A stretch of 64,000 nucleotides of DNA from Diadema antillarum (taxonomy: Eukaryota). The notes beneath the pieces were generated by a model, which was not told the origin of the DNA, ran no database searches, and saw only the letters and a program-made list of their open reading frames with translations. Made by a program: the position numbers and the translations under genes. The DNA is taken from positions 930,001 to 994,000 of the forward strand of contig NW_027271622.1 in assembly GCF_040938485.1 (NCBI RefSeq), written 5' to 3'. Below, in pieces: positions 9,989-59,272 of this stretch (position 1 is its first letter; each line of letters opens with the position of its first letter).

Positions 9989-10123
9989 NNNNNNNNNNNN
10001 NNNNNNNNNNNNNNNNNNNNNNNNNNNNNNNNNNNNNNNNNNNNNNNNNNNNNNNNNNNNNNNNNNNNNNNNNNNNNNNNNNNNNNNNNNNNNNNNNNNN
10101 NNNNNNNNNNNNNNNNNNNNNNN
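9989..10123. other. Assembly gap (135 N)
   Basis: Run of N. Confidence 1.
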
Positions 10124-18696: not shown

Positions 18697-18766
18697 CGTG
18701 CGCGTATGTATGGATGCAGGGGTCATCAAAATACCTTGAGCAGGGTGGAAGATCCAGAGATTTTAA

Positions 18767-27968: not shown

Positions 27969-28350
27969 AGGGATCGTACAGTTTTGGTTGAGACCTAATT
28001 TCAGGTTTCTAACATTTTTTGGTGAAATAATGAGAAACCTCATATGAAATATAAAAGAGCATGTGATTCTATGAGAAATTCAACGTTTATTTGATGAAAA
28101 TTGGTTTTGAAATGGCTGAGATATCTAAAAAAGAGCGATTCTAAGAAAGTGTGGGACCCACACTTTGTTACGATCGCTTTGTTTTACTTTGTTTTTGGAT
28201 GTTTTAGCCATTCCAAACCCGATTTTCATCAAATAAACTTTGAATTCCTCTTAAGATGGTATGCTCTGTACTATATCATAAATGTTTTCTTGGTATCTTG
28301 CAAAAAGTTAAAAGCCCAATTTTCATCTCCACCAATACTGTACCATCCCT
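27969..28350. mobile_element. Inverted copy of Kolobok-like MITE family 2
   Basis: TTAA|AGGGATCGTACAG ... CTGTACCATCCCT|TTAA; reverse complement of 18767-19148. Confidence 0.88.
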
Positions 28351-28482
28351 TTAATCTATATCGTCGGTCGGCCTTGATGAAACCTTTGCATAAATGATAT
28401 AGGTTTCAAATAGGTATCATGGGCCCTATTTATGGGATCCAAGGTTATAGATTATCACCTAGTACTCTGCACCTGACATGAC

Positions 28483-36955: not shown

Positions 36956-38125
36956 CTAGATGTTAATCGTCTTTTGCTGCTCATGAGTTGTTTCAATGTC
37001 GAAAAGACTTTTCTGAGAGGCGCGAGCACCTATAAAAATGTTTCTGATGGCTTCACGAAATTGCGGATATCGGATGGTATAGATGATCGGGTTGGCGCAC
37101 GAGTTGATGAAGGCCAAAATGACCAACACTCGGTAAACGGTCCCAAAGGCTAGCGAGTGGGAGACGAGGTTAAGGTGAAGTGCGAGGAACATTGTCTGAT
37201 CAGGACCCCAGCAGATGATGAAGACTGTCACGACCATGATGAGCATTTGAAGGATCCTCTTCCTCGCGACGACGTGACTCAGAGTGGGCTTCGAACGGTT
37301 CGTGTTCGTTTTACTTTCAGAAAACTTTGTCGTCTGTTTCTGGAGAACGATAACCATTTTGATTTGGGCTAGGATCATAATGACAGCCGGAGCTACAAAT
37401 TCGATTGTAAAGATGAAGATGCCTACGGCCTTGTGAGCAAGAGCTGTGGAAAATCCAACCATGCACGTATTGCTGGAAGAATATCCCACAACGAACTGAT
37501 AGCCGTTGGCGGCCAAGGCTGCAACCCAGATCAAGATAATGTAGATTCTGGTGCGGGTTGCGCTGAAAGTCCTCCTGAAGTAGAGCGGATAAGCGATGGC
37601 GATATATCGCTCTATCGATATGGCTGCCAATATGAATATCGAAGCAACCACAGATACCCACATCAGAAGCGAAGTGTGGACTACTTTGCAGTAGAGACCT
37701 GCGAGCATGGAGTTGCTTGGTAGTGATTTGATGATGGGGATCGGTAGTAGAAACACAGACGTGGCAAAATCAGCGATAGCTAGTGCGCCGATCAACGTGT
37801 CTGTGGAGCGTCGAACACGATTCCGATGGAATAGGACGACCATCACCAGCAGGTTACCGACGATTCCTAGCAGGGCAAAGATGAGTTGGAGGATCACCCA
37901 CCAGGTCCACTGAAACGGGATCCAAGACCACTCAGCAGGTGCATTCTTGGGTCCGGCCACTTCAAGAATTTCGGAGAAGAACTCTGTCCTGTTGGAGACT
38001 TCATCGCCATATTGGGACAAAGACCACTCAGTTCCCACAACAGTGTCTCCGTAGCCTTCGGAAAAAGAATTCTTGATCCGGTATTCGTCTACTTCACAAC
38101 CAGATGGGAGTGTTGAGGGACTCAT
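36956..38125 (-). CDS. Class A GPCR 'B', galanin/allatostatin-A receptor-like, 389 aa
   Basis: 7TM with GNLLV, LAIADF, YCK, SIERY, CWGP and NSCANPIIY. The ORF track start at 38137 is a TTG; the first ATG is at 38125. Confidence 0.93.
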   Translation of the reverse strand: MSPSTLPSGCEVDEYRIKNSFSEGYGDTVVGTEWSLSQYGDEVSNRTEFFSEILEVAGPKNAPAEWSWIPFQWTWWVILQLIFALLGIVGNLLVMVVLFHRNRVRRSTDTLIGALAIADFATSVFLLPIPIIKSLPSNSMLAGLYCKVVHTSLLMWVSVVASIFILAAISIERYIAIAYPLYFRRTFSATRTRIYIILIWVAALAANGYQFVVGYSSSNTCMVGFSTALAHKAVGIFIFTIEFVAPAVIMILAQIKMVIVLQKQTTKFSESKTNTNRSKPTLSHVVARKRILQMLIMVVTVFIICWGPDQTMFLALHLNLVSHSLAFGTVYRVLVILAFINSCANPIIYTIRYPQFREAIRNIFIGARASQKSLFDIETTHEQQKTINI

Positions 38126-39516
38126 GTCTAACAGCAATATCAGTGACTAAAACATTCAGTAATGATTGTAACTTTTGCAGAGCGTATGATATTTAGCGTT
38201 GAGATTGTACTTCCAGCATGACATGACATGTACAGACCTAAGTCTGTAACTCCGGAGTGCACCTAGAAGGCTTTCTAAATGGGAGTTTCACTTAACCGTC
38301 GTATTTATGGTATTGAGAGCTGTAGAATTTATCGGCTAATTCCACACATGGGAAGGACGCGCAACATTCACAAAAAGGGCGAACGTAAAAAAAAAAGCAT
38401 GCATTTTAGTACTGAAGGAGGTGTTTATTTCGCGTCGCATAATATGAAATGGAATACCATTGTGACCACCAATCACAACCACAGTAGCTGTGAAATAAAT
38501 CGATAAGTGCTTACTTCTGGTGTATTTCTCTCGAGTGGACCTTTTGTGAAGAAATTCTGCGTAAAGTCAACTCGGAAATGAAAACATATTACGTGTTTTT
38601 GAATGCTCATTATAATTCATGAATCGACTCTGTGCTGAATACGAAGCATTTCTGCTCATAGAGTAGATGGATGAATGGAAGGAATTATCAGGTTAAAATT
38701 CGATTGATAGACATCAATGAGGGTATAGGTATTAGAAGTAACCATATGAAGTACCTTTGGAATAGTCTTTGAAGGATTCAAACACACACACATACACACA
38801 CGCACACACACACACACACACACACGCGCATACCACCACCACCACCACCTTAACCACCAATATCTGAAATATCTGAAATATCGAATATAATCAATTTGAT
38901 AATGGCAAGAAAGATCTCTTCTTCCCCTCTATCTTTCGAAGTGTATTTTTCAAAACCATTATTCACAAATTCACAAAGATGAATAACACGCTACACGTGA
39001 TTGAGGAATAACGGGAAAAAAATAATGTGTGTACCTGTTCGTAGGTTTTCTCCTGTGTATTTTTAGACTTTAGGAAAAAAAAACCAACACTAACATTTGT
39101 TTCACTGTTTCCTTGAAAAGTGGAAATATGCATTTTGAATTTTAGTATATTTCATATTGTTGTTTGTGTGTGTATTCATTTCAAGGATAGAAGTGTTGTC
39201 TTTTTCTCTTTCCTCTTCTTTTCTCTTTCTTTACCTTATTTGTTTTTAAGCATTTTTTTACACTTTCTAAGGACAAAATTTAAACATATCTACAATATCT
39301 AATGATAACAAATTATCTGATTTCATGATGCAAAGTCATAGCCATTTTTTAACCCTTCCCTTGAACCTCAAACTCACTTACTTCAAGCAGTAGAAAGTCG
39401 ACATCTTCACATATTAACGTGCTTCTGATTTTGATTTGGAATGTGAGTCGACCCCCCCCCCCTTGTTTGTTAGCTATAGCTATTATTAGCTTACACAGAC
39501 ACACAGACACACACAG

Positions 39517-39567
<51 letters not shown>

Positions 39568-40336
39568 CTTGAATAGAATCAGTTTGAAGAAAGAGAGATA
39601 ACATGATTTTGATTTTAAGGTTAATTCTCCACATTCAAACAATTTAAAATAAATAGCAGAAATTCAATGGATTTTTTGTTCTTTTTCAATACAAGGTATA
39701 CGACTGCGTCGATATTACATCCAAGCATTCCTTTTGAAACGTTTTACACCATAAAGGCTTCGGAATTTTGTTGCAAATATGTGGTTTTGTGTTTGGGTGT
39801 TATCAAAAAATTGAAAAAGAAATATTTAGAAGTAGGCAATTTAAGCATTCAAGACGAAAGTTTTATTTACCATCTCGACACAAATAACAATATCGAATCT
39901 TTACTTTAAATCTAAAACCATTGAATGTCTTGAGTGTTGATTGGCATAGAAACTCTTATAGCGTTGCATACACTGTCCAAAGTCCCCAGCACAAGAAGAA
40001 CATAATGTTTCTGTTGTAAGGAAGTTTTTAAATGAAACTTCCTTATAGTTTTATTTAGTTCATACATCACATTATTTTCACCTAACTAAGACATACCACG
40101 ATGAATAAGTAAACTCTTGATTCCCAGACCTCGATTATGTGGTTTAGTATACAAATACAACTCTAATATACTTTTCAGAGGTAGTTATGCATAGGCAGAT
40201 TGGCAAGAATACCATTTTGCTGTCTCTGCAAAGATTATTTTTCTCACAGAAGTTGCACAAATTTGACACAGCACAAGGTATCACTCAGTGTTGTTGAATA
40301 TTATGTCACAAAGACTAATTTATCTACAATTCAGTA

Positions 40337-43300
40337 TAACCGGAGGGCCAAACCCCAAAAAGTCGCTTACTTAACGAGTGAGTTGCACTCTCTCTACAAA
40401 CTAAGTAGACCATGCTTATTTTCAAGTTTTTATTGTATCAAACAACATTCCACTGGTCTACCTCAAAAAATTTGTTGCGAAAGCCTCCAAATCCAAGATG
40501 GCGTCCAAGATGGCCGCCATATTTACTGAATTTGTTATTTGAAAGATAGAATTTGATTGAAAAATCAGATTTCAACAAATTTGATGTCATGTGAAAGAAA
40601 ATAAAATTTTCTACAAGTTGATACCATTTTTGTGGGTTATTGTGATAATTGGATTGAGATTTTAAGGAAAAAACACTCATTTTTTGATATGTTTCTGAAA
40701 AAAGGAAAATCATGAAAATGCTTGATTCAGCATAAATCAGAGAAAGACTGAAGGATTATCTTGAAACGTTTCAAGAATTTTGTTTGACATATAATTAATA
40801 TTTGAAGAAAATAAGGGGGCAGTACCATTTTCGGTTCAGGAGTTATAATGTCTCAAACTTGAAAACTCACTATGTAAAAATGGCCACTTGAGTTGTGACA
40901 AGACCTTGTTGGTCGTAAAAAAAGCCTGCGCGCGCCAAGACTACTACACGCACCACTGGCACTGGCGCTTGTAGCAGTGCCAGTGGTGCGTGTAGTAGTC
41001 TTGGCAAACGCAGACTTTTTCTTTGACAAACGCGGGTTTGTGCCTGCAAACTAACTTTTCATACCAAGTGGTAGATCAGGTGACGCTGATTGCTATTATT
41101 TCAAAGTAGATTGTTCTGAAGCAGATGAAATGAAGCAAAAAATATCTTTCAAATAGAGGTAGAAGCTTGAAACAACCTTGCTATAGAAAGTTTAAAACAA
41201 AATTTGGATCAATCACTCAAAAACTTCAAGATTGCAGGCCATCAAAGCTGACATAGTGTATTGCGCCAAAGTAAATATATCATTTCGATTTTGATACAAT
41301 TTTGTCTGTTTTGCTGTCTATTCATTATGGTTTTTATTATTCTCAACATTTTAATGCCATTTCAAACCATCTTAGGTTTTTATGGAGACATTTTTCAGAA
41401 TGCACCATGAATATTTCTCTAAAAAGTTTTAAAAAATAAAACTAAAAATGTTTATGAAAACCATGCAGAAATTAACATTTTTTCCATATAATCAATATTT
41501 GGAGAAAATCAGAGGTCAGTATTGTATTTGGTTCAGGAGTTATAATGTCTCAAACTTGAAATCCCATTTTACATAATATGTTATTTACACGCATCTGTTC
41601 CCAAAGACGTCACAGAGTGTCAAATCCAAGATCGTGCTTACTTTTCGAGTTCCACTCTCTCTATAAACAGGACCATACATAATATTAAGCATACTAAGCA
41701 ATGTTCCGTAAGTACACCTCAGTAGATTTGTTGCAAAGTACAGATGCGGTCCAACGGGGCCGCCATTTTATTGAAATTAACATTTCAAACATAAAATTTG
41801 ATAGAGACATTGGATTGCAACAAATTTGATGTCATATGAAGGAGAGTAAAACTTTCTAAAAGTTGATACCACTTTAGCTGTGTATTGTGATAAATTGGGG
41901 GGGGGGGGATTGTTTGCTTCTCTTTTTTTTGGGGGGGGGGGATCCATACTTTTATATTGTTTTGAAAAAAGGAAGACATGTAAAAATGCATGATTTAGTA
42001 TTTATCAAAGAAGAACTGAAGAATTATTTTGAAACCTGCGATTGAGATTGAGATTTACTGAGATTGAGACATAATTCATATTATTTTCTGGAATTACACG
42101 CAATATCATACACTGTTGACAAGTTAACATCTAAAACTTAAAAAAAATTATATATATGCATTATAAGTTTTGCTTACAACGTGTTTACATGGTCACACGT
42201 AATACTGTCATGGTCTAGTGACTTGCAAGTACCTGCAAACTAATTTTTCATGCCAAGTGGTAGGTGACGCTGGTCGCTATTACTGTAGCATTTCATCATA
42301 GTAGATTGTTCTGAGGCAGATAAAATTGAACAGAAAGTATTTTCCAAAAAGAGATAGGCGCTTACAATTTGGCACAAATTTTGCCAATGTGTAATATTTA
42401 GCGATAAAAATAGTATCCACACAAAATTCAAGATGGCGGTAATTAATCGAGGTTGTCGTTCAAGGCATTATTTACCATTAGTGCACGTAAAACAAAAACC
42501 CAGCTTTACTTAATTCCTCAAACTAGTTCTAAACTGTGAGTTAGGGATTAATGTACAAACTTAAATCAGTATGATTAATGCTAAATATTGTTAGATATAC
42601 TAAATAGATCTGATAAGAATTTTTTTTTTTATGTCAACAGTTATCATGGTTATGGTTTCTTGAAAAGAAAAAATTATAATGGTGATATCTCCGTATATTC
42701 TAGGCTTTATCATAATTTTTTTACATGGTAGAATGTTTTGTAATACAACTAACCTGCACATACAAATCGAATGTGATGTCTCTCCCAATGGTAAACAATA
42801 CCTTTAGTGTGTTGCGTCAAAGTTATCTCAACTTATAACTTATAATTTGATATGTTTGTTTGAATCTTCTTATATTGCCGTCTATTACATGTTTCTATAC
42901 ATCCGAACGATATTGTACTGGTGTAAACCATATTGAGGGTCTTTTTTTTTTTGGGGGGGGGGGGTGGAGCTCATTCCAGTGTTTGGGTAAGGCACAATCT
43001 TTAATAAAAAAGAAATGCTTCTGTATCAAAGATATGCTTTTTTACTTGTATGTTACTCTGCTGCTGTAGAAACGTAAATGATGATGGTATATGTGTAATA
43101 ATGTCTGATCCGTAGATGTCCTTGAAAGCCCTTCTGATCCGAACCCCCCCCCCAAAAAAAAAAAAAAAAAAAAAATCCAACATGGCGGCAATTTCTCAAC
43201 TTTGCTCTTAAATGTGTTGTGCGAAATTACTTTTCAGTATATTGTTCGAATAAAATTGTCCAAATTGATTATTCGTGCTGTAGGCCTATATTCACATTTA

Positions 43301-46300
43301 CAAATAAGCATGCTGAAACTGTATTTTCCGTTATCAGATTTCTCTTACATTGTTTTTAGGCTGATTTCATGTGGGTTATAGTGTCACAATTGATCTGAAC
43401 TTATGCCATTGGTAGATGCTTTCCTGTATTAGATATCAGGATCACTCGAGAGTGAAAATGTTCATTTTCATTCATTTTAGAGTGACCTCGGGGATCACTC
43501 GAAGAGTGACGAGTGATCCCTAAGGCAGGGCTCGACACTAACGGTGGTCCGGTGGCCCGGGCCACAAAAAACGCACGTCGGGCCACCAAAATGTCAGAAA
43601 TGAAGAATTTGGTGGCCTGATCGGGCCACCAAAAAAGGTCGGATATTTGCCTAGTGTGGAGCTCTGCCTAGGTCACTCTAAAATGAGTGAAAATGAACAT
43701 TTTCACTCTAAAGTCACTCCAAGTTCACTCTACATATACCGTTTTCTGTTTTTCACTCCTCACATCAAAAGTAAAAACTTCCACTCGCTTTGTTTTTTCT
43801 TTTTCGGAGAGTAGAATATCACTGGTTTAAAAAATGTGTCCATAAGAACTTAAGGCGGTTTAAGATAGCACAACAGACAAATTTGTATCAAAAACGAAAT
43901 AATACATTTAATTTGGCGCAATACACTATGTCAACTTTGATGGCTGTCATCTTGATTTTTTTTTTTTGAGCGGTTTTTGATCTAAATTCTGTCTTAAACT
44001 ATCTATAACAAGATTGGTGCCAAGTTTCAAGCTACTACCTCTATTTGAATTTTTTTTTTGCTTCATCTCATCTGCTTCAGAACAATCTACTTTGAAATAA
44101 TAGCGATCAGTATCACCTGAGCTACCACTTGGTATGAAAAGTTAGTTTGCAGGCACAAACCCGCGTTTGTCAAAGCAAAAGTCTGCATTTGTCAAGACTA
44201 CTACACGCACTACTGGCACTGCCAAAAGCGCCAGTGCCAGTGGTGCATGTAGTAGTATTGGCGCGCGCAGACTTTTTTACGACCAACAAGGTCTTGGTCA
44301 CAACTAAAGTGGCCATTTTTACGTAGTGAGTTTTCAAGTTTGAGACATTATAACTCCTGAACCAAAATTGGTACTGACCCCTAATTTTCTCCAAATATTA
44401 ATTATATGTCAAACAAAATTCTTGAAACGTTTCAAGATAATCCTTCAGTCTTTCTCTGATTTATGCTGAATCAAGCATTTTCATGATTTTCCTTTTTTCA
44501 GAAAAATATCAAAAAATGAGTGTTTTTTCCTTAAAATATCAATCCAATTATCACAATAACCCACAAAAATGGTATCAACTTGTAAAAAAATTTATTCTCT
44601 TTCATATGACATCACATTTGTTGAAATCTGATGTTTCTATCGAATTCTATCATTTAAATAACAAATTCAGTAAATATGGCGGCCATCTTGGACGCCATCT
44701 TGGATTTGGAGGCTTTCGCAACAAATTTTTTGAGGTAGACCAGTGGAATGTTGTTTGTTACATTAAAAACTTGAAAATAAGCATGGTCTACTTAGTTTGT
44801 AGAGAGAGTGCAACTCGACCTCTGTTTTTAGCTTTTGGCCCCCCGGTTAACCGGAGGGCCAAACCCCAAAAAGTCGCTTACTTAACGAGTGAGTTGCACT
44901 CCCATTTTACATAATATGTTATTTACACGCATCTGTTCCCAAAGACGTCACAGAGTGTCAAATCCAAGATCGTGCTTACTTTTCGAGTTCCACTCTCTCT
45001 ATAAACAGGACCATACATAATATTAAGCATACTAAGCAATGTTCCGTAAGTACACCTCAGTAGATTTGTTGCAAAGTACAGATGCGGTCCAACGGGGCCG
45101 CCATTTTATTGAAAAACAACATTTCAAACATAAAATTTGATAGAGACATTGGATTGCAACAAATTTGATGTCATATGAAGGAGAGTAAAACTTTCTAAAA
45201 GTTGGTACCACTTTAGCTGTGTATTGTGATAAATTGGGGGGGGGGGGATTGTTTGCTTCTCTTTTTTTTTTGGGGGGGGGATCCATACTTTTATATTGTT
45301 TTGAAAAAAGGAAGACATGTAAAAATGCATGATTTAGTATTTATCAAAGAAGAACTGAAGAATTATTTTGAAACCTGCGATTGAGATTGAGATTTACTGA
45401 GATTGAGACATAATTCATATTATTTTCTGGAATTACACGCAATATCATACACTGTTGACAAGTTAACATCTAAAACTTAAAAAAAAATTATATATATGCA
45501 TTATAAGTTTTTGCTTACAACGTGTTTACATGGTCACACGTAATACTGTCATGGTCTAGTGACTTGCAAGTACCTGCAAACTAATTTTTCATGCCAAGTG
45601 GTAGGTGACGCTGGTCGCTATTACTGTAGCATTTCATCATAGTAGATTGTTCTGAGGCAGATAAAATTGAACAGAAAGTATTTTCCAAAAAGAGATAGGC
45701 GCTTACAATTTGGCACAAATTTTGCCAATGTGTAATATTTAGCGATAAAAATAGTATCCACACAAAATTCAAGATGGCGGTAATTAATCGAGGTTGTCGT
45801 TCAAGGCATTATTTTACCATTAGTGCACGTAAAACAAAAAACCCAGCTTTACTTAATTCCTCAAACTAGTTCTAAACTGTGAGTTAGGGATTAATGTACA
45901 AACTTAAATCAGTATGATTAATGCTAAATATTGTTAGATATACTAAATAGATCTGATAAGAATTTTTTTTTTTATGTCAACAGTTATCATGGTTATGGTT
46001 TCTTGAAAAGAAAAAAATTATAATGGTGATATCTCCGTATATTCTAGGCTTTATCATAATTTTTTTACATGGTAGAATGTTTTGTAATACAACTAACCTG
46101 CACATACAAATCGAATGTGATGTCTCTCCCAATGGTAAACAATACCTTTAGTGTGTTGCGTCAAAGTTATCTCAACTTATAACTTATAATTTGATATGTT
46201 TGTTTGAATCTTCTTATATTGCCGTCTATTACATGTTTCTATACATCCGAACGATATTGTACTGGTGTAAACCATATTGAGGGTCTTTTTTTTTGGGGGG

Positions 46301-48193
46301 GGGGGGGTGGAGCTCATTCCAGTGTTTGGGTAAGGCACAATCTTTAATAAAAAAGAAATGCTTCTGTATCAAAGATATGCTTTTTTACTTGTATGTTACT
46401 CTGCTGCTGTAGAAACGTAAATGATGATGGTATATGTGTAATAATGTCTGATCCGTAGATGTCCTTGAAAGCCCTTCTGATCCGAACCCCCCCCCCCAAA
46501 AAAAAAAAAAAAAAAAAAAATCCAACATGGCGGCAATTTCTCAACTTTGCTCTTAAATGTGTTGTGCGAAATTACTTTTCAGTATATTGTTCGAATAAAA
46601 TTGTCCAAATTGATTATTCGTGCTGTAGGCCTATATTCACATTTACAAATAAGCATGCTGAAACTGTATTTTCCGTTATCAGATTTCTCTTACATTGTTT
46701 TTAGGCTGATTTCATGTGGGTTATAGTGTCACAATTGATCTGAACTTATGCCATTGGTAGATGCTTTCCTGTATTAGATATCAGGATCACTCGAGAGTGA
46801 AAATGTTCATTTTCATTCATTTTAGAGTGACCTCGGGGATCACTCGAAGAGTGACGAGTGATCCCTAAGGCAGGGCTCGACACTAACGGTGGTCCGGTGG
46901 CCCGGGCCACAAAAAACGCACGTCGGGCCACCAAAATGTCAGAAATGAAGAATTTGGTGGCCTGATCGGGCCACCAAAAAAGGTCGGATATTTGCCTAGT
47001 GTGGAGCTCTGCCTAGGTCACTCTAAAATGAGTGAAAATGAACATTTTCACTCTAAAGTCACTCCAAGTTCACTCTACATATACCGTTTTCTGTTTTTCA
47101 CTCCTCACATCAAAAGTAAAAACTTCCACTCGCTTTGTTTTTTCTTTTTCGGAGAGTAGAATATCACTGGTTTAAAAAATGTGTCCATAAGAACTTAAGG
47201 CGGTTTAAGATAGCACAACAGACAAATTTGTATCAAAAACGAAATAATACATTTAATTTGGCGCAATACACTATGTCAACTTTGATGGCTGTCATCTTGA
47301 TTTTTTTTTTTGAGCGGTTTTTGATCTAAATTCTGTCTTAAACTATCTATAACAAGATTGGTGCCAAGTTTCAAGCTACTACCTCTATTTGAATTTTTTT
47401 TTTGCTTCATCTCATCTGCTTCAGAACAATCTACTTTGAAATAATAGCGATCAGTATCACCTGAGCTACCACTTGGTATGAAAAGTTAGTTTGCAGGCAC
47501 AAACCCGCGTTTGTCAAAGCAAAAGTCTGCATTTGTCAAGACTACTACACGCACTACTGGCACTGCCAAAAGCGCCAGTGCCAGTGGTGCATGTAGTAGT
47601 ATTGGCGCGCGCAGACTTTTTTACGACCAACAAGGTCTTGGTCACAACTAAAGTGGCCATTTTTACGTAGTGAGTTTTCAAGTTTGAGACATTATAACTC
47701 CTGAACCAAAATTGGTACTGACCCCTAATTTTCTCCAAATATTAATTATATGTCAAACAAAATTCTTGAAACGTTTCAAGATAATCCTTCAGTCTTTCTC
47801 TGATTTATGCTGAATCAAGCATTTTCATGATTTTCCTTTTTTCAGAAAAATATCAAAAAATGAGTGTTTTTTCCTTAAAATATCAATCCAATTATCACAA
47901 TAACCCACAAAAATGGTATCAACTTGTAAAAAAATTTATTCTCTTTCATATGACATCACATTTGTTGAAATCTGATGTTTCTATCGAATTCTATCATTTA
48001 AATAACAAATTCAGTAAATATGGCGGCCATCTTGGACGCCATCTTGGATTTGGAGGCTTTCGCAACAAATTTTTTGAGGTAGACCAGTGGAATGTTGTTT
48101 GTTACATTAAAAACTTGAAAATAAGCATGGTCTACTTAGTTTGTAGAGAGAGTGCAACTCGACCTCTGTTTTTAGCTTTTGGCCCCCCGGTTA
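40337..48193. mobile_element. 7857-bp head-to-tail dimer of a non-autonomous Academ-like DNA transposon (units 40337-44849 and 44848-48193)
   Basis: Termini TAACCGG(A/G)GGGCCAAA inverted. The 3-bp TSD GTA is proven by the empty site TTCAGTA|CTTGTG at 56820/56821. Unit 1 has ~950-bp subterminal inverted repeats; unit 2 lacks 40390-41562. No transposase ORF. Confidence 0.88.
43526..43640. mobile_element. 5' fragment of the 11215 hAT-like MITE family nested in the dimer (second copy at 46871-46985)
   Basis: CAGGGCTCGACACTAACGGTGG...; enclosed by a 40-bp inverted repeat (43449-43488 / 43670-43709). Confidence 0.75.
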
Positions 48194-48526
48194 GTACTTG
48201 TGTGATTGACCACAGCATTTGTGCCTTCAAAAGGAAATGTTAAAAGATTAAACATGAAACCTTTTTTGTCTATTTGTACACAATGCGTAATTTTTACTTT
48301 TTACAATAAAGACATCTCATGTTTTTTTTTAAGACAGCTTTACATCAAAGCGTTTCAAAAGTCGCTACTTTTTTCACATATGGAGAAAACCCTTTGACAC
48401 AAGTTAATAGCTTGAAATGACTACAGCTGTAAAGGCAAATTACAAAAGCGCGCACGCACAGCAAACCTATATGCATAATAAGGACATGAGCAGTCCTTGT
48501 TTCTAGTAAAAGGACATGTGCAATAT

Positions 48527-49825
48527 TATACAGATATTGACTGGTACGGGGTGGAATATAACATTCTTTGGACCGCCAGGGAGTTATATTTTCCCAAGGG
48601 ATTATATTTTCCCGAAGCGCGCAGCGCTGAGGGAAAATATGATCACGAGGGAAAATATAACTCCCTGGCGGTCCAAAGATTGTTACATTCCACCCCCTAC
48701 CAGTCGATATCTGTTAGATTAGATGGCCTTGCCCTCCATTGTGCTTTGCAGAAGAGCCTACACTAACGACGTATAGCCTAATCGTTTATACGCTCATGTC
48801 AGCCCGACCAGACGCTGTATGCGCGCAGACTGTCGCGATTTGGTAGTTGTAAAGCGGCGACTGGACTGTGTAGTTGCTAGGCTCATGTCCTCTATAAACG
48901 ACAGGAGGCCCTAGGGTCTACTAACGTTAACGTTAGGCTCAAAGTAACGACGCTTTAGGGCCCTATGATATGATATAGTTAAATTAGGCTCAGGTCCAAA
49001 AGATGTTTTAGGGTCTACTCACAAAACAAATCTAACTTTAGGCCTTAAACGTTATGGCCTACTGGCCAATCTTTATCATTTGACATTTTGTTTCTACAGG
49101 TAAGCCCTAACGTTATCTATGTCTAGATTCTAACGTTAATTAGCTCTGAGTCACACATAGAACCTTCTAGACAACTAGGCTCTACATGTTTGTTAAATGT
49201 TATAGGGCCCACTAGATAGACTCTATTATAACTGTAATAGAGTAGGCCTAACGTTACCTTCTGTCATCAGGAATCTGCAGCAATTTCAAAATCAGTCTAT
49301 TTCCCCTCTGTTGCAGAGATGAACATTGTAGAAACACAGTGTAGAAACACAGTCTGCCCGGTGTCGTACAGTTTATAGTCCTCCACAACCGTGGTTTGTT
49401 CGGTGTAACGTTAGGCCTGGATCTAACGTAGGCCTACCCGGTAAGTCTAACTCGTCGTTAAGTTACGTCAATACAAAGATGCATGAATTGCCCTCGTTCT
49501 ACGAACTGAACTGAACAAAATGTCTCTAGACTATTAACTCGCTTGGTTTGGGCCATGTTTTCCTTATCCTCCAAAATCCTCGTCGTCGTTTATTACAGAC
49601 AAAACGGGGCTCCATTTTGAAGTGTGAATCCAAACTTCGCGGGCCGAATGATACGTGCATACGTAAACGGTACATTGGGTAGCCTACTATGTAGCATGTA
49701 TTTATACACTGTACGTAACGTTTAGCTTCCCGAATTCCATCCACACGTACGTATACCAGGCAGGCCTAGTGATAGCGCATGACGCTACTCCGCGCCGCGC
49801 CGTCTAGTCTACTCTCTCACGCATC

Positions 49826-49856
<31 letters not shown>

Positions 49857-50149
49857 GTGGTGGGGGAGGGGGGGGGGGGTGAGTGGGAGAAGATTATATC
49901 GATCCAGACTGCAGTTATCGATAATAATCGTTTGCTCCTCCTAGTTACCGACGTGGTCCCACATCCTTATATTGGTGTAATTGTTTGTTTTTCAACCGTA
50001 AGAGGGCGACACACATGGAAAAAATATATTCAGTTGACCAGTTGGTCAATATAACGAGCTGGGAAAATATAACAGTTGCGATCCTCGCAAACAGCATCAC
50101 GTGATGAGCTCTCGACCAATCACGTACCAGACACTGTCTAAGCCATCTA
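48527..50149. mobile_element. 1.62-kb insertion specific to duplication copy 1
   Basis: Absent at the paralogous site GTGCAATAC|AATGCATT (57150). Flanked by ATAT (or AATAT) direct repeats; inner ends TAGATGGC (48720) ... GCCATCTA (50149). Confidence 0.75.
48530..48714. mobile_element. 185-bp near-perfect hairpin MITE
   Basis: ACAGATATTGACTGGTACGGGGTGGAAT...GGGAGTTATATTTTCCC is inverted as GGGAAAATATAACTCCC...ATTCCACCCCCTACCAGTCGATATCTGT. Confidence 0.82.
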
Positions 50150-51196: not shown

Positions 51197-52354
51197 CTAA
51201 GCAGCTAGAGTAGATGCAGTCTCAGCAGCAGAGGGAGAAATCCCGAAGACGGAAACATTCTCTTTCTTTTCGCGAGTCAGAATGCTCTTCACCGCCGACC
51301 GAAAGGTGACATTGCGCACGGTGTAAATGATAGGATTGGCACAGGAATTGTAGAAACCGAGGACAGTGAAGATCCTGTTGAGAGGGCTGTAGACGTAAGA
51401 CGGGCTGATGATGTGGAGGTTGAACAGGAGGAAGGCGCACTGGCTTGGACCCCAGCAGATCACGAAGATAATGACCACGATCAAAAGCATCTCGATGACG
51501 CGTTGCCTAGCAACGTGGAGGTGAAGAGAAGCCTTGTTCTTCCCTTCTGCAGAGTTCATGAAGATCCTGGACTGGCGCTGGAGTGTTATCGCCGTCATGG
51601 TCTGACTTGCGACCATGATCAGGAACGGGCAAAAGAACTTGATGATGACGGATGACAAGCCGTTAAACATCTGGAAACCAGGAGAGCCGCGCTGGAGGAC
51701 ACAGGAGTGGGAGGCGGCGTCGATCTTCTTGAAGAAAATATGGAACGGTATGTAAATGGCGAAACTCACCAACCAAATTGCAAGGATGTAGGCGATGGTG
51801 CGACGCTTGCTGAAGAGGCGACGAAACTGGAACGGGTAGACCACGGCAGCAAATCGTTCAAGCGAGATAGTGGTTAAGGTGAAAACGGATGCTGCTACAC
51901 AGCACCACATGAAAGCGCTTGTATCAATCATCCTGCAATAGAATTCGCCCAGTGGCGTGAGGGGCATCCGACGTATTTGTGGAAGTGGGATGATGAACAC
52001 GGAGGAAAAGAAATCAGCGATAGCCAGAGCTCCGATGAGGATATCCGTCGAGTTTCTGTCGACTCGCCTGTTGAAAACGACGACGATGACGAGCCCATTT
52101 CCGATGATGCCGATGATTGCCGAGATCAGCTGGAGAATGACGTTCCATGACCATCTGATCGGATGCCATGACCACGCCGGCCAAAGATCTCCCTCTTCTG
52201 CGGTTGTTTCTAACTCGAGGGTGGTGATTATTCCCTCAAGTTCTTCTGTAAAGGGCGCCGGGGAGGGCGTGACATTTTGTGCGAAATTAAAAGGCACAAA
52301 GAGGTAGACAAAGACGAAAAGGATGCAGTTCATGCGAGTTGCACAAATCGCCAT
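51197..52354 (-). CDS. Class A GPCR 'C', galanin/allatostatin-A receptor-like, 385 aa, with candidate signal peptide
   Basis: 7TM with GNGLV, LAIADF, YCR, SLERF, CWGP and NSCANPIIY; hydrophobic N-terminus ILFVFVYLFVPFNFA-Q. Confidence 0.93.
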   Translation of the reverse strand: MAICATRMNCILFVFVYLFVPFNFAQNVTPSPAPFTEELEGIITTLELETTAEEGDLWPAWSWHPIRWSWNVILQLISAIIGIIGNGLVIVVVFNRRVDRNSTDILIGALAIADFFSSVFIIPLPQIRRMPLTPLGEFYCRMIDTSAFMWCCVAASVFTLTTISLERFAAVVYPFQFRRLFSKRRTIAYILAIWLVSFAIYIPFHIFFKKIDAASHSCVLQRGSPGFQMFNGLSSVIIKFFCPFLIMVASQTMTAITLQRQSRIFMNSAEGKNKASLHLHVARQRVIEMLLIVVIIFVICWGPSQCAFLLFNLHIISPSYVYSPLNRIFTVLGFYNSCANPIIYTVRNVTFRSAVKSILTREKKENVSVFGISPSAAETASTLAA

Positions 52355-53420
52355 TACTGACTAAGAAAAATAGAATAAGAAAGTAACACCCGAAAAGTTA
52401 CGTGATGAGAGCACACACCCGTCTTACCGGGACGTCTTGCTATAAATGTTGTTAATTTGAGAAGGAGAGGTCTGGAAAACGTGCAAGTGTCTATTCAGCT
52501 TCGGTAAAGAATTTTCATTATTTGAGTGGAGAAGTGGAAGAGGGTGGTTTTTGTACAGATGTCCCCCTTTAAACTGCAATTCACACATTCCTTGGAGTTA
52601 CTAAATAATCAATGACCTTTACCATTAAAAATTGCTGCAGGTAACGCGTCAGACAACCCATTAAAGGACGTTTTAATTTTTCCCCGTTTCACGCTAGTGG
52701 AGTGATTCCTTTCAGTGCCCGCGAAATCTGCTAGGGTTGGAAACTAAAAGCTTTGTCGCCTCACTCTCAAACAGATATGAAGATATTATCTTGTCTGCAG
52801 TGATGAAATTGGGAATTCATGCTAATGGACATAAACTGAAAGCATATTTTTTGATGGCATAAGAATTCGATTTATATTTTTTCTTACATTCTTAGATCGG
52901 AAATATGATTGACAGAATCTGATTTTTTTTCTTCATTTTTTCTTCACTCTTTCACCACGTTTTGTTTTCCTTCTTATGGAGTGCGTGGAGTAGTGGTGGT
53001 GTTAATATCTAAAAAGCCCTGTAAAGTTCATATTGCAATGTGCAAGGGAGGAATACCCATTTCGAAGTGGATTTGTGCCTGACATACGTTCTGCTTTGAA
53101 GGACTTTTATCAAATATCATTTGGTGTATAAGTGCTCTGGTGTTATTATTCCTCATGCGTGCCAACAACAAACGGTGTGAATGTGTTGAGAATACAACGT
53201 ATCAGAAATTCTTTAAAGGCAACGGAGAAATTCGTCTTATTTACGTCATAAATTTGTTATGTAATGGATCTAGATTTGTTTTTCTTATGTATATGTTTAT
53301 CAAGTTTTGTATAGAAAAAAAAAATGCTACAGAACCGATAATTCAACTGAAATGAAGTTACATGGTTATTGAATAAGGAACGATCTTATACAGTAGATTT
53401 ATCCTTTTCTATGTCTGAGT

Positions 53421-54590
53421 CTAGATGTTAATCGTCTTTTGCTGCTCATGAGTTGTTTCAATGTCGAAAAGACTCTTCTGAGAGGCGCGAGGACCTTTAA
53501 AAATGTTTCTGATGGCTTCACGAAATTGCGGATAGCGGATGGTATAGATGATCGGGTTGGCGCAGGAGTTGATGAAGGCCAAAATGACCAAAACACGGTA
53601 AACGGTCCCAAAGGCTAGTGAGTGGGAGACGAGGTTAAGGTGAAGTGCGAGGAACATTGTCTGATCAGGACCCCAGCAGATGATGAAGACTGTCACGACC
53701 ATGATGAGCATTTGAAGGATCCTCTTCCTCGCGACGACGTGACTCAGAGTGGGGTTCGAACGGTTCGTGTTCGTTTTACTTTCAGAAAACTTTGTCGTCT
53801 GTTTCTGGAGAACGATAACCATTTTGATTTGGGCTAGGATCATGATGACAGCCGGAGCAACAAATTCGATTGTAAAGATGAAGATGCCTACGGCCTTGTG
53901 AGCAAGAGCTGTGGAAAATCCAACCATGCACGTATTGCTGGAAGAATATCCCACAACGAACTGATAGCCGTTGGCGGCCAAGGCTGCAACCCAGATCAAG
54001 ATAATGTAGATTCTGGTTCGGGTTGCGCTGAAAGTCCTCCTGAACTAGAGCGGATAAGCGATGGCGATATATCGCTCTATCGATATGGCTGCCAATATGA
54101 ATATCGAAGCAACCACAGATACCCACATCAGAAGCGAAGTGTGGACTACTTTGCAGTAGAGACCTGCGAGCATGGAGTTGCTTGGTAGTGATTTGATGAT
54201 GGGGATCGGTAGTAGAAACACAGACGTGGCAAAATCAGCGATAGCAAGTGCGCCGATCAACGTGTCTGTGGAGCGTCGAACACGATTCCGATGGAATAGG
54301 ACGACCATCACCAGCAGGTTACCGACGATTCCTAGCAGGGCAAAGATGAGTTGGAGGATCACCCACCAGGTCCACTGAAACGGGAACCAAGACCACTCAG
54401 CAGGTGCATTCTTGGGTCCGGCCACTTCAAGAATTTCGGAGAAGAACTCTGTCCTGTTGGAGACTTCATTGCCATATTGGGACAAAGACCACTCAGTTCC
54501 CACAACAGTGTCTCCGTAGCCTTCGGGAAAAGAATTCTTGATCCGGTATTCGTCTACTTCACAACCAGATGGGAGTGTTGAGGGACTCAT
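53421..54590 (-). pseudogene. GPCR B' with one premature in-frame stop after the ERY motif
   Basis: Offset from B is exactly 16465 at both ends, so there is no frameshift. Codon 54045-54047 is TAG where B has TAC (Tyr; 37580-37582); the rest of the frame is open. Confidence 0.8.
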
Positions 54591-55271
54591 GTCTAACAGC
54601 AATATCAGTGACTAAAACATTCAGTAATGATTGTAACTTTTGCAGAGCGTATGATATTTAGCGTTGAGATTGTACTTCCAGCATGACATGACATGTGAAA
54701 CGTAGAGACCTAAGTCTGTAACTCCGGAGTGCACCTGGATGTCTTTCTAAATGGGAGTTTCACTTAACCGTCGTATTTATGGTATTGAGAGCTGTAGATT
54801 TATCGGCTAATTCCGCACATGGGAAGGACGCGCAACATTCACAAAAAGGGCGAACGTAAAAAAAAAAAAAAGCATGCATTTTAGTACTGAAGGAGGTGTT
54901 TATTTCGCGTCGCATAATATGAAATGGAATACCATTGTGACCACCAATCACATCACAGTAGCTGTGAAATGAATCGATAAGTGCTTACTTCTGGTGTATT
55001 TCTCTCGAGTGGACCTTTTGTGAAGAAATCCTGCGTAAAGTCAACTCGGAAATGAAAACATATTACGTGTTTTTGAATGCTCATTATAATTCATGAATCG
55101 ACTCTGTGCTGAATACGAAGCATTTCTGCTCACAGAGTAGATGGATGAATGGAAGGAATTATCAGGTTAATATTCGATTGATAGACATCAATGAGGGTAT
55201 AGGTATTAGAAGTAACCATATGGAGTACCTTTGGAATAGTCTTTGAAGGATTCAAACACACACACATACAC

Positions 55272-55303
<32 letters not shown>

Positions 55304-55989
55304 GCGCATACCACCACCACCACCACCTTAACCACCAATATCTGAATCTAAGTCATCGAATATAATCAATTTGATAATGGCAAGAAAGATCTCTTCTTCC
55401 CCTCTATCTTTCGAAGTGTATTTTTCAAAACCATTATTCACAAATTCACAAAGATGAATAACACGCTACACGTGATTGAGGAATAACGGGAAAAAAATAA
55501 TGTGTGTACCTGTTCGTAGGTTTTCTCCTGTGTATTTTTAGACTTTAGGAAAAAAAAAACAAACACTAACATTTGTTTCACTGTTTCCTTGAAAAGTGGA
55601 AATATGCATTTTGAATTTTAGTATATTTCATATTGTTGTTTGTGTGTGTATTCATTTCAAGGAGAGAAGTGTTGTCTTTTTCTCTTTCTTCTTCTTTTCT
55701 CTTTCTTTACCTTATTTGTTTTTAAGCATTTTTTACACTTTCTAAGGACAAAATTTAAACATATCTACAATATCTTATGATAACAAATTATCTGATTTCA
55801 TGATGCAAAGTCATAGCCATTTTTTAACCCTTCCCTTGAACCTCAAACTCACTTACTTCAAGCAGTAGAAAGTCGACATCTTCACATATTAACGTGCTTC
55901 TGATTTTGATTTGGAATGTGAGTCGACCCCCCCCCCTGTATGTTAGCTATAGCTATTATTAGCTTACACAGACACACAGACACACACAG

Positions 55990-56053
<64 letters not shown>

Positions 56054-58078
56054 TTGAATAGAATCAGTTTGAAGAAAGAGAGATAACATGATTTTGATTT
56101 TAAGGTTAATTCTCCACATTCAAACAATTTAAAATAAGTAGCAGAAATTAAATGGATTTTTTGTTCTTTTTCAATACAAGGTATACGACTGTGTCGATAT
56201 TACATCCAAGCATTCCTTTTGAAACGTTTTACACCATAAAGGCTTCGGAATTTTGTTGCAAATATGTGGTTTTGTGTTTGGGTGTTATCAAAAAATTGAA
56301 AAAGAAATATTTAGAAGTAGGCAATTTAAGCATTCAAGACGAAAGTTTTATTTACCATCTCGACACAAATAACAATATCGAATCTTTACTTTAAATCTAA
56401 AACCATTGAATGTCTTGAGTGTTGATTGGCATAGAAACTCTTATAGCGTTGCATACACTGTCCAAAGTCCCCAGCACAAGAAGAACATAATGTTTCTGTT
56501 GTAAGGAAGTTTGTAAATGAAACTTCCTTATAGTTTTATTTAGTTCATACATCACATTATTTTCACCTAACTAAGACATACCACGATGAATAAGTAAACT
56601 CTTGATTCCCAGACCTCGATTATGTGGTTTAGTATACAAATACAACTCTAACATACTCTTCAGAGGTAGTTATGCATAGGCAGTTTGGCAAGAATACCAT
56701 TTTGCTGTCTTTGCAAAGATTATTTTCTCACAGAAGTTGCACAAATTTGACACAGCACAAGGTATCACTCAGTGTTGTTGAATATTATGTCACAAAAACT
56801 AATTTATCTACAATTCAGTACTTGTGTGATTGACCACAGCATTTGTGCCTTCAAATGGAAATGTTAAAAATTAAACATGAAACCTTTTTTATCTATTTGT
56901 ACACAATGCGTAATATCTAATTTTTACAATAAAGGACATCTCATGTTTTTTTAAAGACAGCTTTACATCAAAGCGTTTCAAAAGTCGCTACTTTTTTCAC
57001 ATATAGAGAAAACCCTTTGACTTAAGTTTAATTGCTTGAAATGACTACAGCTGTAAAGGCAAATTAAAAAAGCGCGCACGCACAGCAAACCTACATGCAT
57101 AATGAGGACATGAGCAGTCCTTGTTTCTAGTAAAAGGACATGTGCAATACAATGCATTTTGACCTGTATTGCTTTACAATACCTTGATCATCACAAAAAT
57201 ATGGCCAAATGAAAATCTAGCTATATGCAATACTTTTTTTTCGGTATTTTCTTTCTACAGATTGCTTAGCTACTCAAATGAAATGGTCTTCTCAACCAGA
57301 TTCTGTGAATGCCATTATCTGCCAATCATAGCTATATTAAAAAGAAATTATTAACAAAATACTTTAGAATATAATCTATACTTCCCCAAGACTGAGGAGA
57401 ACTTCCATTTTTCAACGCTATGACTTTAACATGATGAATTCAAGATGATAAATTGGGAATAATAATGATTAGGCCTACTGCAATTTGTAATTGACTGACT
57501 GAAAAATATCAACATTCTTTAAATAAACACGAAAAAAAAAGAGAAAAAATACCTGAAAAATCGTAAAGTAATCGTGTTTAAAAAAAAAGGAGATTTTGTA
57601 TTCAGTTTTCGAAGCTCATATTTCTTACGCAACCAGATGTTACAAAAGCGTGCATGAGTTGTTATGCTAACTTGTCGAAAATGACAACCAACAACCCGGT
57701 GAATCACATGTTCTCCATTTTGCGAAAGCTCAGATGAATCTGGCCTTGTGAGACATCTATAGAGGAACTGATATTGCAGGGCTTGTAGGTTTATATTCAA
57801 CAAGATCAGGTCCACTTTCTTCATGGACACCAATTAGAAAACAATTAGAAAAGTCAATTTCAAAGTATAAAACTCTTAAACTATTAGTTTCATTGAATGA
57901 ATTAATTAATCCCTTTCATTGATGTGGGGCACAACTTATATCACACCTATTCTATGATTCATAAAGAAGTATTTTTGACTGAAGCATGATGCTTTCAGGT
58001 GGAGTTTTTATGAAATCAAAGATAACGTGTAACGAAGAGACATAAAAACACTTATGAACCCTAGCCAGGTTTAACATT

Positions 58079-59272
58079 CTAAGCAGCCAGAGTAGATGCA
58101 GTCTCCGCGGCAGAGGGAGAAATCCCGAAGACGGAAACATTCTCTTTTGTTTCGCGAGTCAGAATGCTCTTCACCGCCGACCGAAAGGTGACATTGCGCA
58201 CGGTGTAAATGATAGGATTGGCACAGGAATTATAGAAACCCAGAACAGTGAAGATCCTGTTGAGAGGGCTGTAGACGTAAGACGGGCCGATGATGTGGAG
58301 GTTGAACAGGAGGAAGGCGCACTGGCTTGGACCCCAGCAGATCACGAAGATGATGACCACGATCAATAGCATCTCGATGACGCGTCGCCTAGCAACGTGG
58401 AGGTGAAGAGAAGCCTTGTTCTTACCTTCTGCAGAGTTCATGAAAATCCTGGACTGCCGCTGGAGTGTTATCGCCGTCATGGTCTGACTGGCGACCATGA
58501 TCAGGAACGGGCAAAAGAACTTGATGATGACGGACGACAAGCCGTTAAACATTTGGAAACCAGGAGAGCCGCGCTGCAGGACACAGAAGTGGGAGGCAGC
58601 GTCGATCTCCTTGAAGAAAATATGGAACGGTATGTAAATGGCGAAACTCACCAACCAAATTGCAAGGATGTAGGCGATGGTGCGACGCTTGCTGAAGAGG
58701 CGACGAAACTGGAACGGGTAGACCACGGCAGCAAATCGTTCCAGCGAGATAGTGGTTAAGGTGAAAACGGATGCTGCTACACAGCACCACATGAAAGCGC
58801 TTGTATCAATCATCCTGCAATAGAATTCGCCCAGTGGCGTGAGGGGCATCCGACGTACTTGTGGAAGTGGGATGATGAACACGGAGGAAAAGAAATCCGC
58901 GATGGCCAGAGCTCCGATGAGGATATCCGTCGAGTTTCTGTCGACTCGCCCGTTGAAAACGACGACGATGACGAGCCCATTTCCGATGATGCCGATGATT
59001 GCCGAGATCAGCTGGAGAATGACGTTCCATGACCATCTGATCGGATGCCATGACCACACCGGCCGAAGATCTCCTTCTTCTGCGGTTGTTTCTAACTCGA
59101 GGGTGGTGATTATTCCTTCAAGTTCTTCTGTAAAGGGCGCCGGGGATGGCGTGAAATTTTGTGCAAAACTAAAAGGCACAAACAGGCAAGCAAAGACAAT
59201 AAGAATGCAGTTCGTTCGAGTTGCGCAAATCTCCATTACAGAATAAAAAAATAGAATAAGAAAGTAACACAT
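58079..59272 (-). CDS. Class A GPCR C' (paralogue of C); start equivalent to C is the ATG at 59236
   Basis: About 96% identical to C (16 of 385 aa differ by eye); all 7TM motifs are intact. Confidence 0.92.
   Translation of the reverse strand: MCYFLILFFYSVMEICATRTNCILIVFACLFVPFSFAQNFTPSPAPFTEELEGIITTLELETTAEEGDLRPVWSWHPIRWSWNVILQLISAIIGIIGNGLVIVVVFNGRVDRNSTDILIGALAIADFFSSVFIIPLPQVRRMPLTPLGEFYCRMIDTSAFMWCCVAASVFTLTTISLERFAAVVYPFQFRRLFSKRRTIAYILAIWLVSFAIYIPFHIFFKEIDAASHFCVLQRGSPGFQMFNGLSSVIIKFFCPFLIMVASQTMTAITLQRQSRIFMNSAEGKNKASLHLHVARRRVIEMLLIVVIIFVICWGPSQCAFLLFNLHIIGPSYVYSPLNRIFTVLGFYNSCANPIIYTVRNVTFRSAVKSILTRETKENVSVFGISPSAAETASTLAA

What the first reader, a model, noticed from the sequence alone, without database searches (positions are those of the whole stretch)
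40337..48196. Head-to-tail transposon dimer with overlapping ends, inserted as one unit under a single TSD
Seen: GTA|TAACCGGAGGGCCAAA ... TTTGGCCCCCCGG-TTAA-CCGGAGGGCCAAA ... TTTGGCCCCCCGGTTA|GTA. The empty site CAGTA|CTTG in the duplicate (56820) proves one 3-bp TSD around the whole 7857 bp. At 44848-44849 the right end of unit 1 and the left end of unit 2 share the terminal TA with no target DNA between them, forming a ~30-bp near-perfect palindrome. The units differ almost only in homopolymer length, but unit 2 keeps just 53 bp of its left end and lacks 1173 bp (TC microhomology), so it is not a simple assembly echo. Established: YR..YR termini, 3-4-bp TSDs and long TIRs are Academ hallmarks, and ordinary cut-and-paste gives monomers. 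Inference: an end-to-end joined (circular or concatemeric) intermediate, or end-targeted reinsertion, in a poorly characterised superfamily.
Basis: partly seen in the sequence, partly recalled or inferred. Interest (0 to 1): 0.72.

Follow-up and report, generated by a model that had tools for sequence, protein, structure and literature searches.

The report
One-off head-to-tail transposon dimer
Two near-identical copies of a gene-less jumping element sit joined end to end inside one target duplication, but this is the only such joint among about 550 copies in the genome, so it looks like a single repair accident and not a normal step in how the element moves.

Summary
Unit 1 (40337-44849, 4513 bp) and unit 2 (44848-48193) are joined head to tail and share TA. 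A single GTA duplication flanks the pair, and a paralogous copy has a clean empty site at 56818-56820. Unit 2 lacks 1173 bp, with TC microhomology at the deletion.

The element is a non-coding, non-autonomous DNA transposon with TAACCGG...CCGGTTA ends and about 940-bp TIRs. It has about 1,100 exact ends in this 1.75-Gb genome. Sixteen other complete copies are all monomers, and 15 of them have perfect 3-bp TSDs.

The two units are 99.8% identical. The next closest copy in the genome is 97%. Both new junctions are unique genome-wide, and no other pair of ends lies within 14 bp of each other.

My reading is a one-off local event. Transposase-cut ends of two sister copies of a single insertion were joined by host repair. 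The resulting 1.9-kb quasi-palindrome then lost one arm.

"Inserted as one unit" is possible but not proven. A regular circular or concatemer intermediate has no support. Academ membership is untested, because no autonomous partner was found. Public reads were too thin to confirm the junction independently. Tandem dimers of DNA transposons are already documented in Drosophila. Earlier notes of this scan cover other transposons in this genome, but no other dimer.

The parts
40334..40336 (+). Left copy of the 3-bp target-site duplication (GTA)
   Evidence: The empty paralogous site reads cagta|cttg at 56818-56820.
40337..44849 (+). Unit 1: full-length 4513-bp non-autonomous element, TAACCGG...CCGGTTA
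   Evidence: No ORF exceeds 143 aa and there is no credible Pfam match. It has the same length class as 16 monomer copies elsewhere.
40337..41319 (+). Left TIR of unit 1. A 16-nt terminal match is followed by 27 nt specific to the left end, then a homologous arm at 40380-41319.
   Evidence: 40380-41319 matches 44816-43863 at 91.7% over 957 bp.
43863..44849 (-). Right TIR of unit 1
44834..44863 (.). End-to-end junction. It is a 30-nt palindrome with one mismatched pair, and TA at 44848-44849 is shared by both ends. It is unique in the genome.
44848..48193 (+). Unit 2: the same element, 99.8% identical to unit 1, lacking 1173 bp
44899..44902 (+). Private deletion junction in unit 2. Unit positions 53-1225 are lost, with TC microhomology at 44900-44901. 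The deletion removes the whole homologous arm of unit 2's left TIR.
   Evidence: The junction 30-mer is unique in the genome.
48194..48196 (+). Right copy of the TSD (GTA)
56818..56820 (+). Unoccupied target (GTA) in the paralogous segment
   Evidence: 36712-40336 matches 53176-56820 at 97%, and 48193-48525 matches 56817-57149 at 95%. Two further empty sites lie on contig C431.

Best explanation
This is a real but singular rearrangement of an ordinary cut-and-paste DNA transposon.

The family:
- It is a 4.5-kb non-coding family with TAACCGG...CCGGTTA ends and about 940-bp TIRs.
- It makes 3-bp TSDs that lean towards T-[T/A/G]-A.
- It normally exists as monomers.

Proposed sequence of events:
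1. One monomer inserted at GTA in the spacer of a GPCR gene cluster.
2. Later, most likely after replication, the transposase cut the right end of one sister copy and the left end of the other. Alternatively it excised one sister copy completely.
3. Host end joining sealed a right end to a left end through their terminal TA. The two ends could belong to the two chromatids directly, or an excised copy could have closed into a circle that then recombined into the resident copy.
4. Either route gives two near-identical units head to tail inside the original single TSD, with no target DNA between them.
5. The joint placed two about 940-bp inverted arms back to back, forming a 1.9-kb quasi-palindrome. 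A 1173-bp microhomology (TC) deletion then removed exactly the arm belonging to unit 2.

What is shown: the structure, the uniqueness of the joint, the sister relationship of the units and the 3-bp TSD rule.

What is inferred: transposase cutting, host end joining, formation in place, and palindrome instability as the cause of the deletion.

The sealed joint keeps both complete 3' strands (...GGTTA-3' on each strand). Simple ligation of ends carrying 2-nt TA-3' overhangs would give exactly this, as when the other strand is cut 2 nt inside the element. One junction cannot distinguish that from TA-microhomology joining of blunt ends.
For: - Exact ends, the shared TA and the single outer GTA are in the sequence.
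- The sequence after the joint is a true left end: position 8 is A, and nt 17-43 are left-specific. It is not a fold-back of the right end.
- The units are 99.82% identical in substitutions. Twenty other copies are 94-97%, and the best other copy genome-wide is 97%.
- The end-to-end joint, the deletion joint and the left flank junction each occur once in 1.75 Gb.
- There are 546+552 exact family ends. All 16 complete copies examined are monomers, and 15 of 16 have perfect 3-bp TSDs.
- No second pair of ends lies 0-14 bp apart.
- The deletion spans unit positions 53-1225, and the TIR arm is positions 44-983.
- Literature: DNA-transposon head-to-tail dimers, deletions at their junctions and the palindrome explanation are described in PMC5932611. 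Sealed circles occur as dead-end by-products of cut-and-paste excision (PMC6943129). Transposase can use ends on sister chromatids (PMC3744419 and PMC4270019, listed).
Against: - No independent read support. The four public runs laid were low-coverage contig sets. They showed only monomer-type ends and the undeleted sequence at 44900.
- No monomer allele at this site was found, so formation in place has not been separated from insertion of a ready-made dimer.
- The transposase is unknown, so its cutting chemistry is conjecture.
- The deletion could equally be abortive gap repair.
- Only 40 candidates were scored, so a closer donor copy could have been missed or could have been excised.
Confidence: 0.55

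Rival explanations
1. One reading: the dimer was formed elsewhere, or outside the chromosome by ligation of two excised copies or a concatemer. It was then integrated as one 7.9-9 kb unit using only its outer ends, which created the single GTA duplication.
For: A single TSD surrounds the whole structure and clean empty sites exist in paralogues. Cut-and-paste removes the donor, so the absence of a donor dimer is not decisive.
Against: It needs every step of the local model plus an extra transposition in which the transposase ignores two intact inner ends. No other dimer exists among about 550 elements. No copy 99% or more identical exists elsewhere.
Confidence: 0.15
2. Double insertion: a second copy, hopped from the sister chromatid, landed in one TSD copy of the first. 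This gives ...TTA-GTA-TAA.... The 5 bp between TA repeats were lost later, for example when the transposase cut both inner ends and the ends were rejoined.
For: Double insertion is the main route to P-element dimers in Drosophila (PMC5932611). TA...TA microhomology would allow the 5-bp loss, by direct inspection of the sequence. The element's preferred target resembles T-W-A.
Against: No TSD is left in the junction. No example in this genome has two ends separated by 3 bp, or by any spacer up to 14 bp. The model needs more steps.
Confidence: 0.1
3. Assembly artefact: only one copy, or a heterozygous full/deleted pair, exists, and the assembler chained them together.
For: The units differ mainly by homopolymer length, which is typical consensus noise. 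No public contig bridges the joint. The assembly contains haplotig-like duplicates.
Against: False joins need shared sequence. A right end and a left end on the same strand share none, yet the joint falls exactly on both termini. The 52 nt after the joint are left-end specific, which excludes a fold-back read. The private deletion shows that two distinct molecules of sequence were assembled.
Confidence: 0.1
4. The family regularly transposes through an end-joined circle or tandem dimer whose abutted ends are the active substrate, as in the bacterial IS3 and IS30 families. This locus is a trapped intermediate.
For: The joint preserves both complete 3' transferred strands, so staggered nicks could regenerate two full ends. 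This is inference. Abutted-end junctions are known substrates in IS elements (PMC3299598, listed).
Against: The joint is unique in the genome. No bridging contig appears in four runs. Insertions show standard 3-bp TSD monomers. In eukaryotic cut-and-paste systems, circles are dead ends (PMC6943129).
Confidence: 0.05

Closest known systems
Tandem dimers of DNA transposons in Drosophila melanogaster populations: P element, hobo and the Bari1 arrays (McGurk and Barbash 2018, PMC5932611)
   Same: Complete cut-and-paste elements are arranged head to tail. Deletions next to or across the junction are frequent (24 of 36 hobo dimers). The authors suggest that the palindrome made by the TIRs at the joint is prone to deletion. 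Bari1 junctions also lack a TSD.
   Different: P and hobo dimers keep an 8-bp TSD in the joint, which indicates double insertion. Here there is none, and the ends overlap by 2 nt. Bari1 junctions have lost TIR sequence, whereas here both termini are complete at the joint. Here the TIRs are about 940 bp, so the palindrome would be far longer. Only a single case is seen.
Sealed extrachromosomal circles of excised cut-and-paste transposons (Sleeping Beauty, PMC6943129; Oxytricha TBE as cited there)
   Same: The two transposase-cut ends of an element are joined by host repair, with no flanking DNA between them.
   Different: Those are free circles and dead-end products. Here the joint is chromosomal, lies between two copies, and would need a recombination or sister-chromatid step. 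No circles were observed here.
Alternative (sister-chromatid or reversed-ends) transposition of maize Ac/Ds (PMC3744419, PMC4270019)
   Same: The transposase acts on ends that belong to two different copies or chromatids and produces local duplications.
   Different: In Ac/Ds the cut ends integrate into a new target and duplicate flanking host DNA. Here the ends appear to have been joined to each other, and only the element is duplicated.
IS3/IS30/IS21-type minicircles and (IS)2 tandem dimers of bacteria (PMC3299598)
   Same: Left and right ends are abutted head to tail.
   Different: Those junctions carry a short spacer, are obligatory and highly reactive intermediates, and recur. Here there is a 2-nt overlap, a single occurrence, and a eukaryotic host.
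AcademX transposons (3-4-bp TSD; PMC10045372 citing Kojima 2020)
   Same: The TSD is 3 bp. By unchecked notes of this scan, young AcademX elements occur in this genome.
   Different: No Academ transposase, XPG remnant or shared terminus was shown for this family.

Membership tests
Academ (AcademX lineage) | 3- or 4-bp target-site duplication | tested here: met
   15 of 16 other complete copies have perfect 3-bp TSDs, and this locus has GTA. The rule is taken from PMC10045372.
Academ (AcademX lineage) | An autonomous relative with the same termini that encodes the Academ DDE transposase fused to or next to an XPG-type nuclease | not tested
   No partner was found. The XPG_I scan of the genome gave only 7 short matches, whose identity I did not examine and none of which I could link to this family. 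The element's ORFs have no credible Pfam match.
Academ (AcademX lineage) | Terminal sequence similarity to described Academ families | not testable with these tools
   No Repbase-like library was available, and the Kojima 2020 paper is not held.
PIF/Harbinger | TSD almost always TAA or TTA | tested here: not met
   Only 10 of 29 unique left flanks end in TTA or TAA. The others include TGA, TAC, GTA, CTT and ATG.
CACTA/EnSpm | CACTA-type termini with a 3-bp TSD | tested here: not met
   The termini are TAACCGG...CCGGTTA.
Tc1/mariner and piggyBac | TA or TTAA target duplication | tested here: not met
   The TSDs are 3 bp and variable. The TTAA at the joint is made from the two element ends, not from target DNA.
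Transposon dimer by double insertion (McGurk and Barbash model) | One TSD-length copy of the target inside the tandem junction | tested here: not met
   The junction has no spacer and a 2-nt overlap. No family ends lie 1-14 bp apart anywhere in the genome.
Circle or tandem-dimer transposition intermediate (IS3/IS30-like) | Recurrent abutted-end junctions, free or chromosomal | tested here: not met
   There is one junction in 1.75 Gb among about 1,100 ends. None appears in four public contig sets, though their coverage is too low to prove absence.

The most novel reading that the evidence does not exclude
The joint is not an accident. It is a trapped transposition intermediate, and this long-TIR, 3-bp-TSD family (possibly Academ) moves through an end-joined circle or dimer. 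The TA-overlapping junction would still carry both complete transferred strands, so staggered nicks could release two full ends. That would be an IS30-like pathway in an animal transposon.
Probability: 0.05. Interest if true: 0.75.

Novelty: new member of a known kind. Interest (0 to 1): 0.27.

Why it matters
This is a clean natural example of two transposase-defined ends sealed to each other inside a chromosome. The repair scar next to the joint shows what happens when long TIRs are placed back to back. It gives one data point on end structure (TA overlap, both 3' strands intact) for a family whose enzyme is unknown. Dimers of this kind are the raw material from which transposon-derived satellites grow. 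Because it is a single event and the phenomenon is documented in Drosophila, it does not change what is known about transposition.

Tried and rejected
- Autonomous partner. An XPG_I (PF00867) scan of the genome gave only 7 short matches, which I could not link to this family. Terminus variants with G or T at position 17 gave 14 places; the one I could pair with a nearby end (contig C37) is a mutated ordinary copy. The first 100 listed ends pair at 3.5-6.5 kb only. Nine ORFs of unit 1 have no credible Pfam match.
- Read support. The run search sampled only 5 words. The best holders had 2 of 5, and all runs were small contig sets. Laying four of them showed family ends running into many different flanks and the undeleted sequence at 44900. 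No bridging contig was found, so the test is inconclusive.
- Allelic haplotig. Contig C431 has both equivalent sites empty, but it is only 86-93% identical to the flank. It is a more distant paralogue or a very divergent haplotype, so I do not claim the insertion is heterozygous.
- piggyBac-like TTAA reading of the joint. Rejected, because the outer flanks are not TTAA.
- Fold-back read artefact. Rejected, because the 52 nt after the joint are of the left-end type.
- Replication template switching (MMBIR) without transposase. Rejected as the main cause, because both breakpoints coincide with the exact termini.
- Earlier notes of this scan. Searches by sequence and by the terminal motif were blank.
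- Kojima 2020 (AcademH paper). It is not held in the library.
Full report
**Observation**

The sequence is as described.
- The left boundary reads cagta|TAACCGGAGGGCCAAA at 40337.
- The internal joint reads TTTGGCCCCCCGGTTAACCGGAGGGCCAAA. TA at 44848-44849 serves both as the last two bases of unit 1 and as the first two bases of unit 2.
- The right boundary reads CCGGTTA|gtacttg. The element ends at 48193 and the second GTA is at 48194-48196.
- The paralogous segment has an uninterrupted ttcaGTActtg at 56818-56820.

A self-comparison of the window adds four points.
- The flanks belong to an older tandem segmental duplication: 36712-40336 matches 53176-56820 at 97%, and 48193-48525 matches 56817-57149 at 95%.
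- Unit 1 has TIRs of about 940 bp at 91.7% identity.
- 41556-44849 matches 44894-48193 at 99.46%.
- The window is otherwise rich in other repeats.

A base-level alignment shows one 1173-bp deletion in unit 2, covering unit positions 53-1225. Reading searches shows TC microhomology at that deletion. Beyond it there are 15 small differences, most of them at homopolymer runs or their edges.

**The element**

Unit 1 has no ORF above 143 aa, and its ORFs have no credible Pfam match. It is therefore non-autonomous.

The genome is 1.75 Gb in 2,963 contigs. Other notes of this scan name it as the sea urchin Diadema antillarum. I did not check this.

The left 200 bp has 1,381 first-look candidates. All 40 that were scored are 100% identical. 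An exact 20-mer covering both end types occurs 546+552 times, which suggests roughly 550 elements with intact ends.

I fetched 20 copies. Sixteen had both exact ends within 8 kb. All sixteen are monomers of 4.3-5.7 kb, and fifteen have perfect 3-bp TSDs of varied sequence. The other four also align as single copies of about 3.4-4.9 kb with slightly mutated ends.

Across 29 unique left flanks the TSD leans to T (20/29), not-C (29/29) and A (17/29). C is enriched just outside the TSD.

This pattern excludes the following:
- TA targets (Tc1/mariner);
- TTAA targets (piggyBac);
- a strict TWA target (PIF/Harbinger);
- CACTA termini.

It is compatible with AcademX, for which 3-4-bp TSDs are reported (PMC10045372). 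TSD length alone does not establish membership, and I found no autonomous partner.

**How unusual is the dimer?**
- The 24-mer across the joint, with up to 2 mismatches, occurs only here.
- A degenerate pattern that accepts any combination of family ends separated by 0-14 nt occurs only here.
- The deletion joint and the left flank junction are also unique.
- In substitutions, unit 1 is 99.82% identical to unit 2 but only 94-97% identical to 20 other copies.
- The best other copy in the genome is 97% identical, among the 40 best of 6,515 candidates.

So the two units are sister copies of one another. They are not two independent arrivals.

**Real or artefact?**

An assembler can only make a false join through shared sequence. 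On one strand a right end and a left end share nothing, yet the joint lies exactly on both termini.

The 52 nt after the joint carry the left-end signature: A at position 8 and a left-specific stretch at nt 17-43. This rules out a fold-back read.

I could not obtain independent confirmation.
- The run search sampled only five words and returned small contig sets.
- In the four runs I laid, contigs stop at 44847-44850 and continue into many different flanks.
- All of those runs show the undeleted sequence at 44900.
- None was seen to bridge the joint.

Each of those runs holds fewer letters than the genome itself, and they may come from other individuals or species, so this neither supports nor refutes the structure.

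**Mechanism**

Both breakpoints of the joint coincide with the exact termini. Ends made by the transposase were therefore involved. Template switching alone would hit both termini with a probability of about 1e-6, by my estimate.

The joint has no TSD copy, so the double-insertion route that explains most P-element dimers (PMC5932611) does not fit without a further 5-bp loss.

The simplest account is that one monomer inserted at GTA. Later a right end of one sister copy and a left end of the other were cut and joined by host repair through TA. This could have happened in either of two ways:
- directly between the chromatids, comparable in logic to Ac/Ds alternative transposition (PMC3744419 and PMC4270019);
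- through a sealed circle, a known by-product of cut-and-paste excision (PMC6943129), that recombined into the resident copy.

Both routes leave the original single TSD around two near-identical units.

The joint retains ...GGTTA-3' on each strand. This fits ligation of ends with 2-nt TA-3' overhangs, but it fits microhomology joining equally well.

The joint would place two 940-bp arms back to back. The 1173-bp deletion removes positions 53-1225, which is the whole homologous arm (44-983) of unit 2. This matches the idea that such palindromes are deletion-prone (PMC5932611). By my estimate, a random deletion of that length would cover the arm in about 3% of placements. All of this mechanism is inference.

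Insertion of a ready-made dimer as one unit is not excluded. It needs an extra step, has no donor and has no parallel among about 550 elements.

A free circular intermediate would not necessarily leave chromosomal dimers, so only circle-seq could exclude it fully.

**Context**

The dimer lies in the spacer of a tandem cluster of intronless rhodopsin-type GPCR genes on the minus strand (36956-38137, 51197-52354, 58079-59272 and 60449-61723). It is about 2.2 kb upstream of the first of these genes.

Contig C431 holds a related cluster with both equivalent sites empty. That contig is only 86-93% identical to the flank, so I do not call the insertion heterozygous.

**Verdict**

The structure is a one-off rearrangement of a kind already documented for DNA transposons in Drosophila.

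What is new:
- an instance in a long-TIR family of a sea urchin;
- an unusually clean joint;
- a tell-tale arm deletion next to it.

Interest is low to moderate.

Noticed in passing
window 36956-38137, 51197-52354, 58079-59272, 60449-61723 (all minus strand): A tandem cluster of intronless rhodopsin-family GPCR genes of 385-424 aa (7tm_1, E about 1e-40 to 1e-43). The transposon dimer sits in the spacer between two of them.
   Followed up: partly
window 53421-54602 (minus strand): The paralogue of the GPCR at 36956-38137 is split into two ORFs of 192 and 185 aa. It is either a young pseudogene or a homopolymer error of the assembly.
   Followed up: no
window 48526-50148: About 1.6 kb is present in this copy of the segmental duplication but absent from the paralogue at about 57149. 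I saw no obvious TIR or TSD at the edges. Its origin is unknown.
   Followed up: partly
window 18762-19152 and 27965-28354; 23204-23916 and 25815-26960: A 390-bp inverted repeat pair (93% identical) brackets about 9 kb. That stretch contains two oppositely oriented arrays, in which self-matches recur at offsets of roughly 160-180 bp. It may be a large foldback-type element.
   Followed up: no
Genome G000, e.g. C6:139354-142877, C11:1898483-1902726, C22:255948-260134: A sister sub-family has the left-type terminus (...GGCCAAACCCT) at both ends and is mostly about 4.2 kb long (3.5-5.0 kb among the listed pairs). This suggests one arm was copied onto the other.
   Followed up: no
L023 (C157:1938820) and L029 (C72:206461): The same insertion, with an identical flank, appears on two contigs. 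This is either haplotig redundancy or a recent segmental duplication in the assembly.
   Followed up: no
Public runs X1-X4 (coded organisms A and B): The family is present at very high word depth in runs labelled as two different organisms, so it is shared by at least two taxa or labels.
   Followed up: no
G000:C431:1562786-1573741: A related GPCR-spacer cluster, 86-93% identical, has both equivalent target sites empty, 8.88 kb apart.
   Followed up: partly
window 9989-10123: A run of 135 N (assembly gap or mask). I left it untouched.
   Followed up: no
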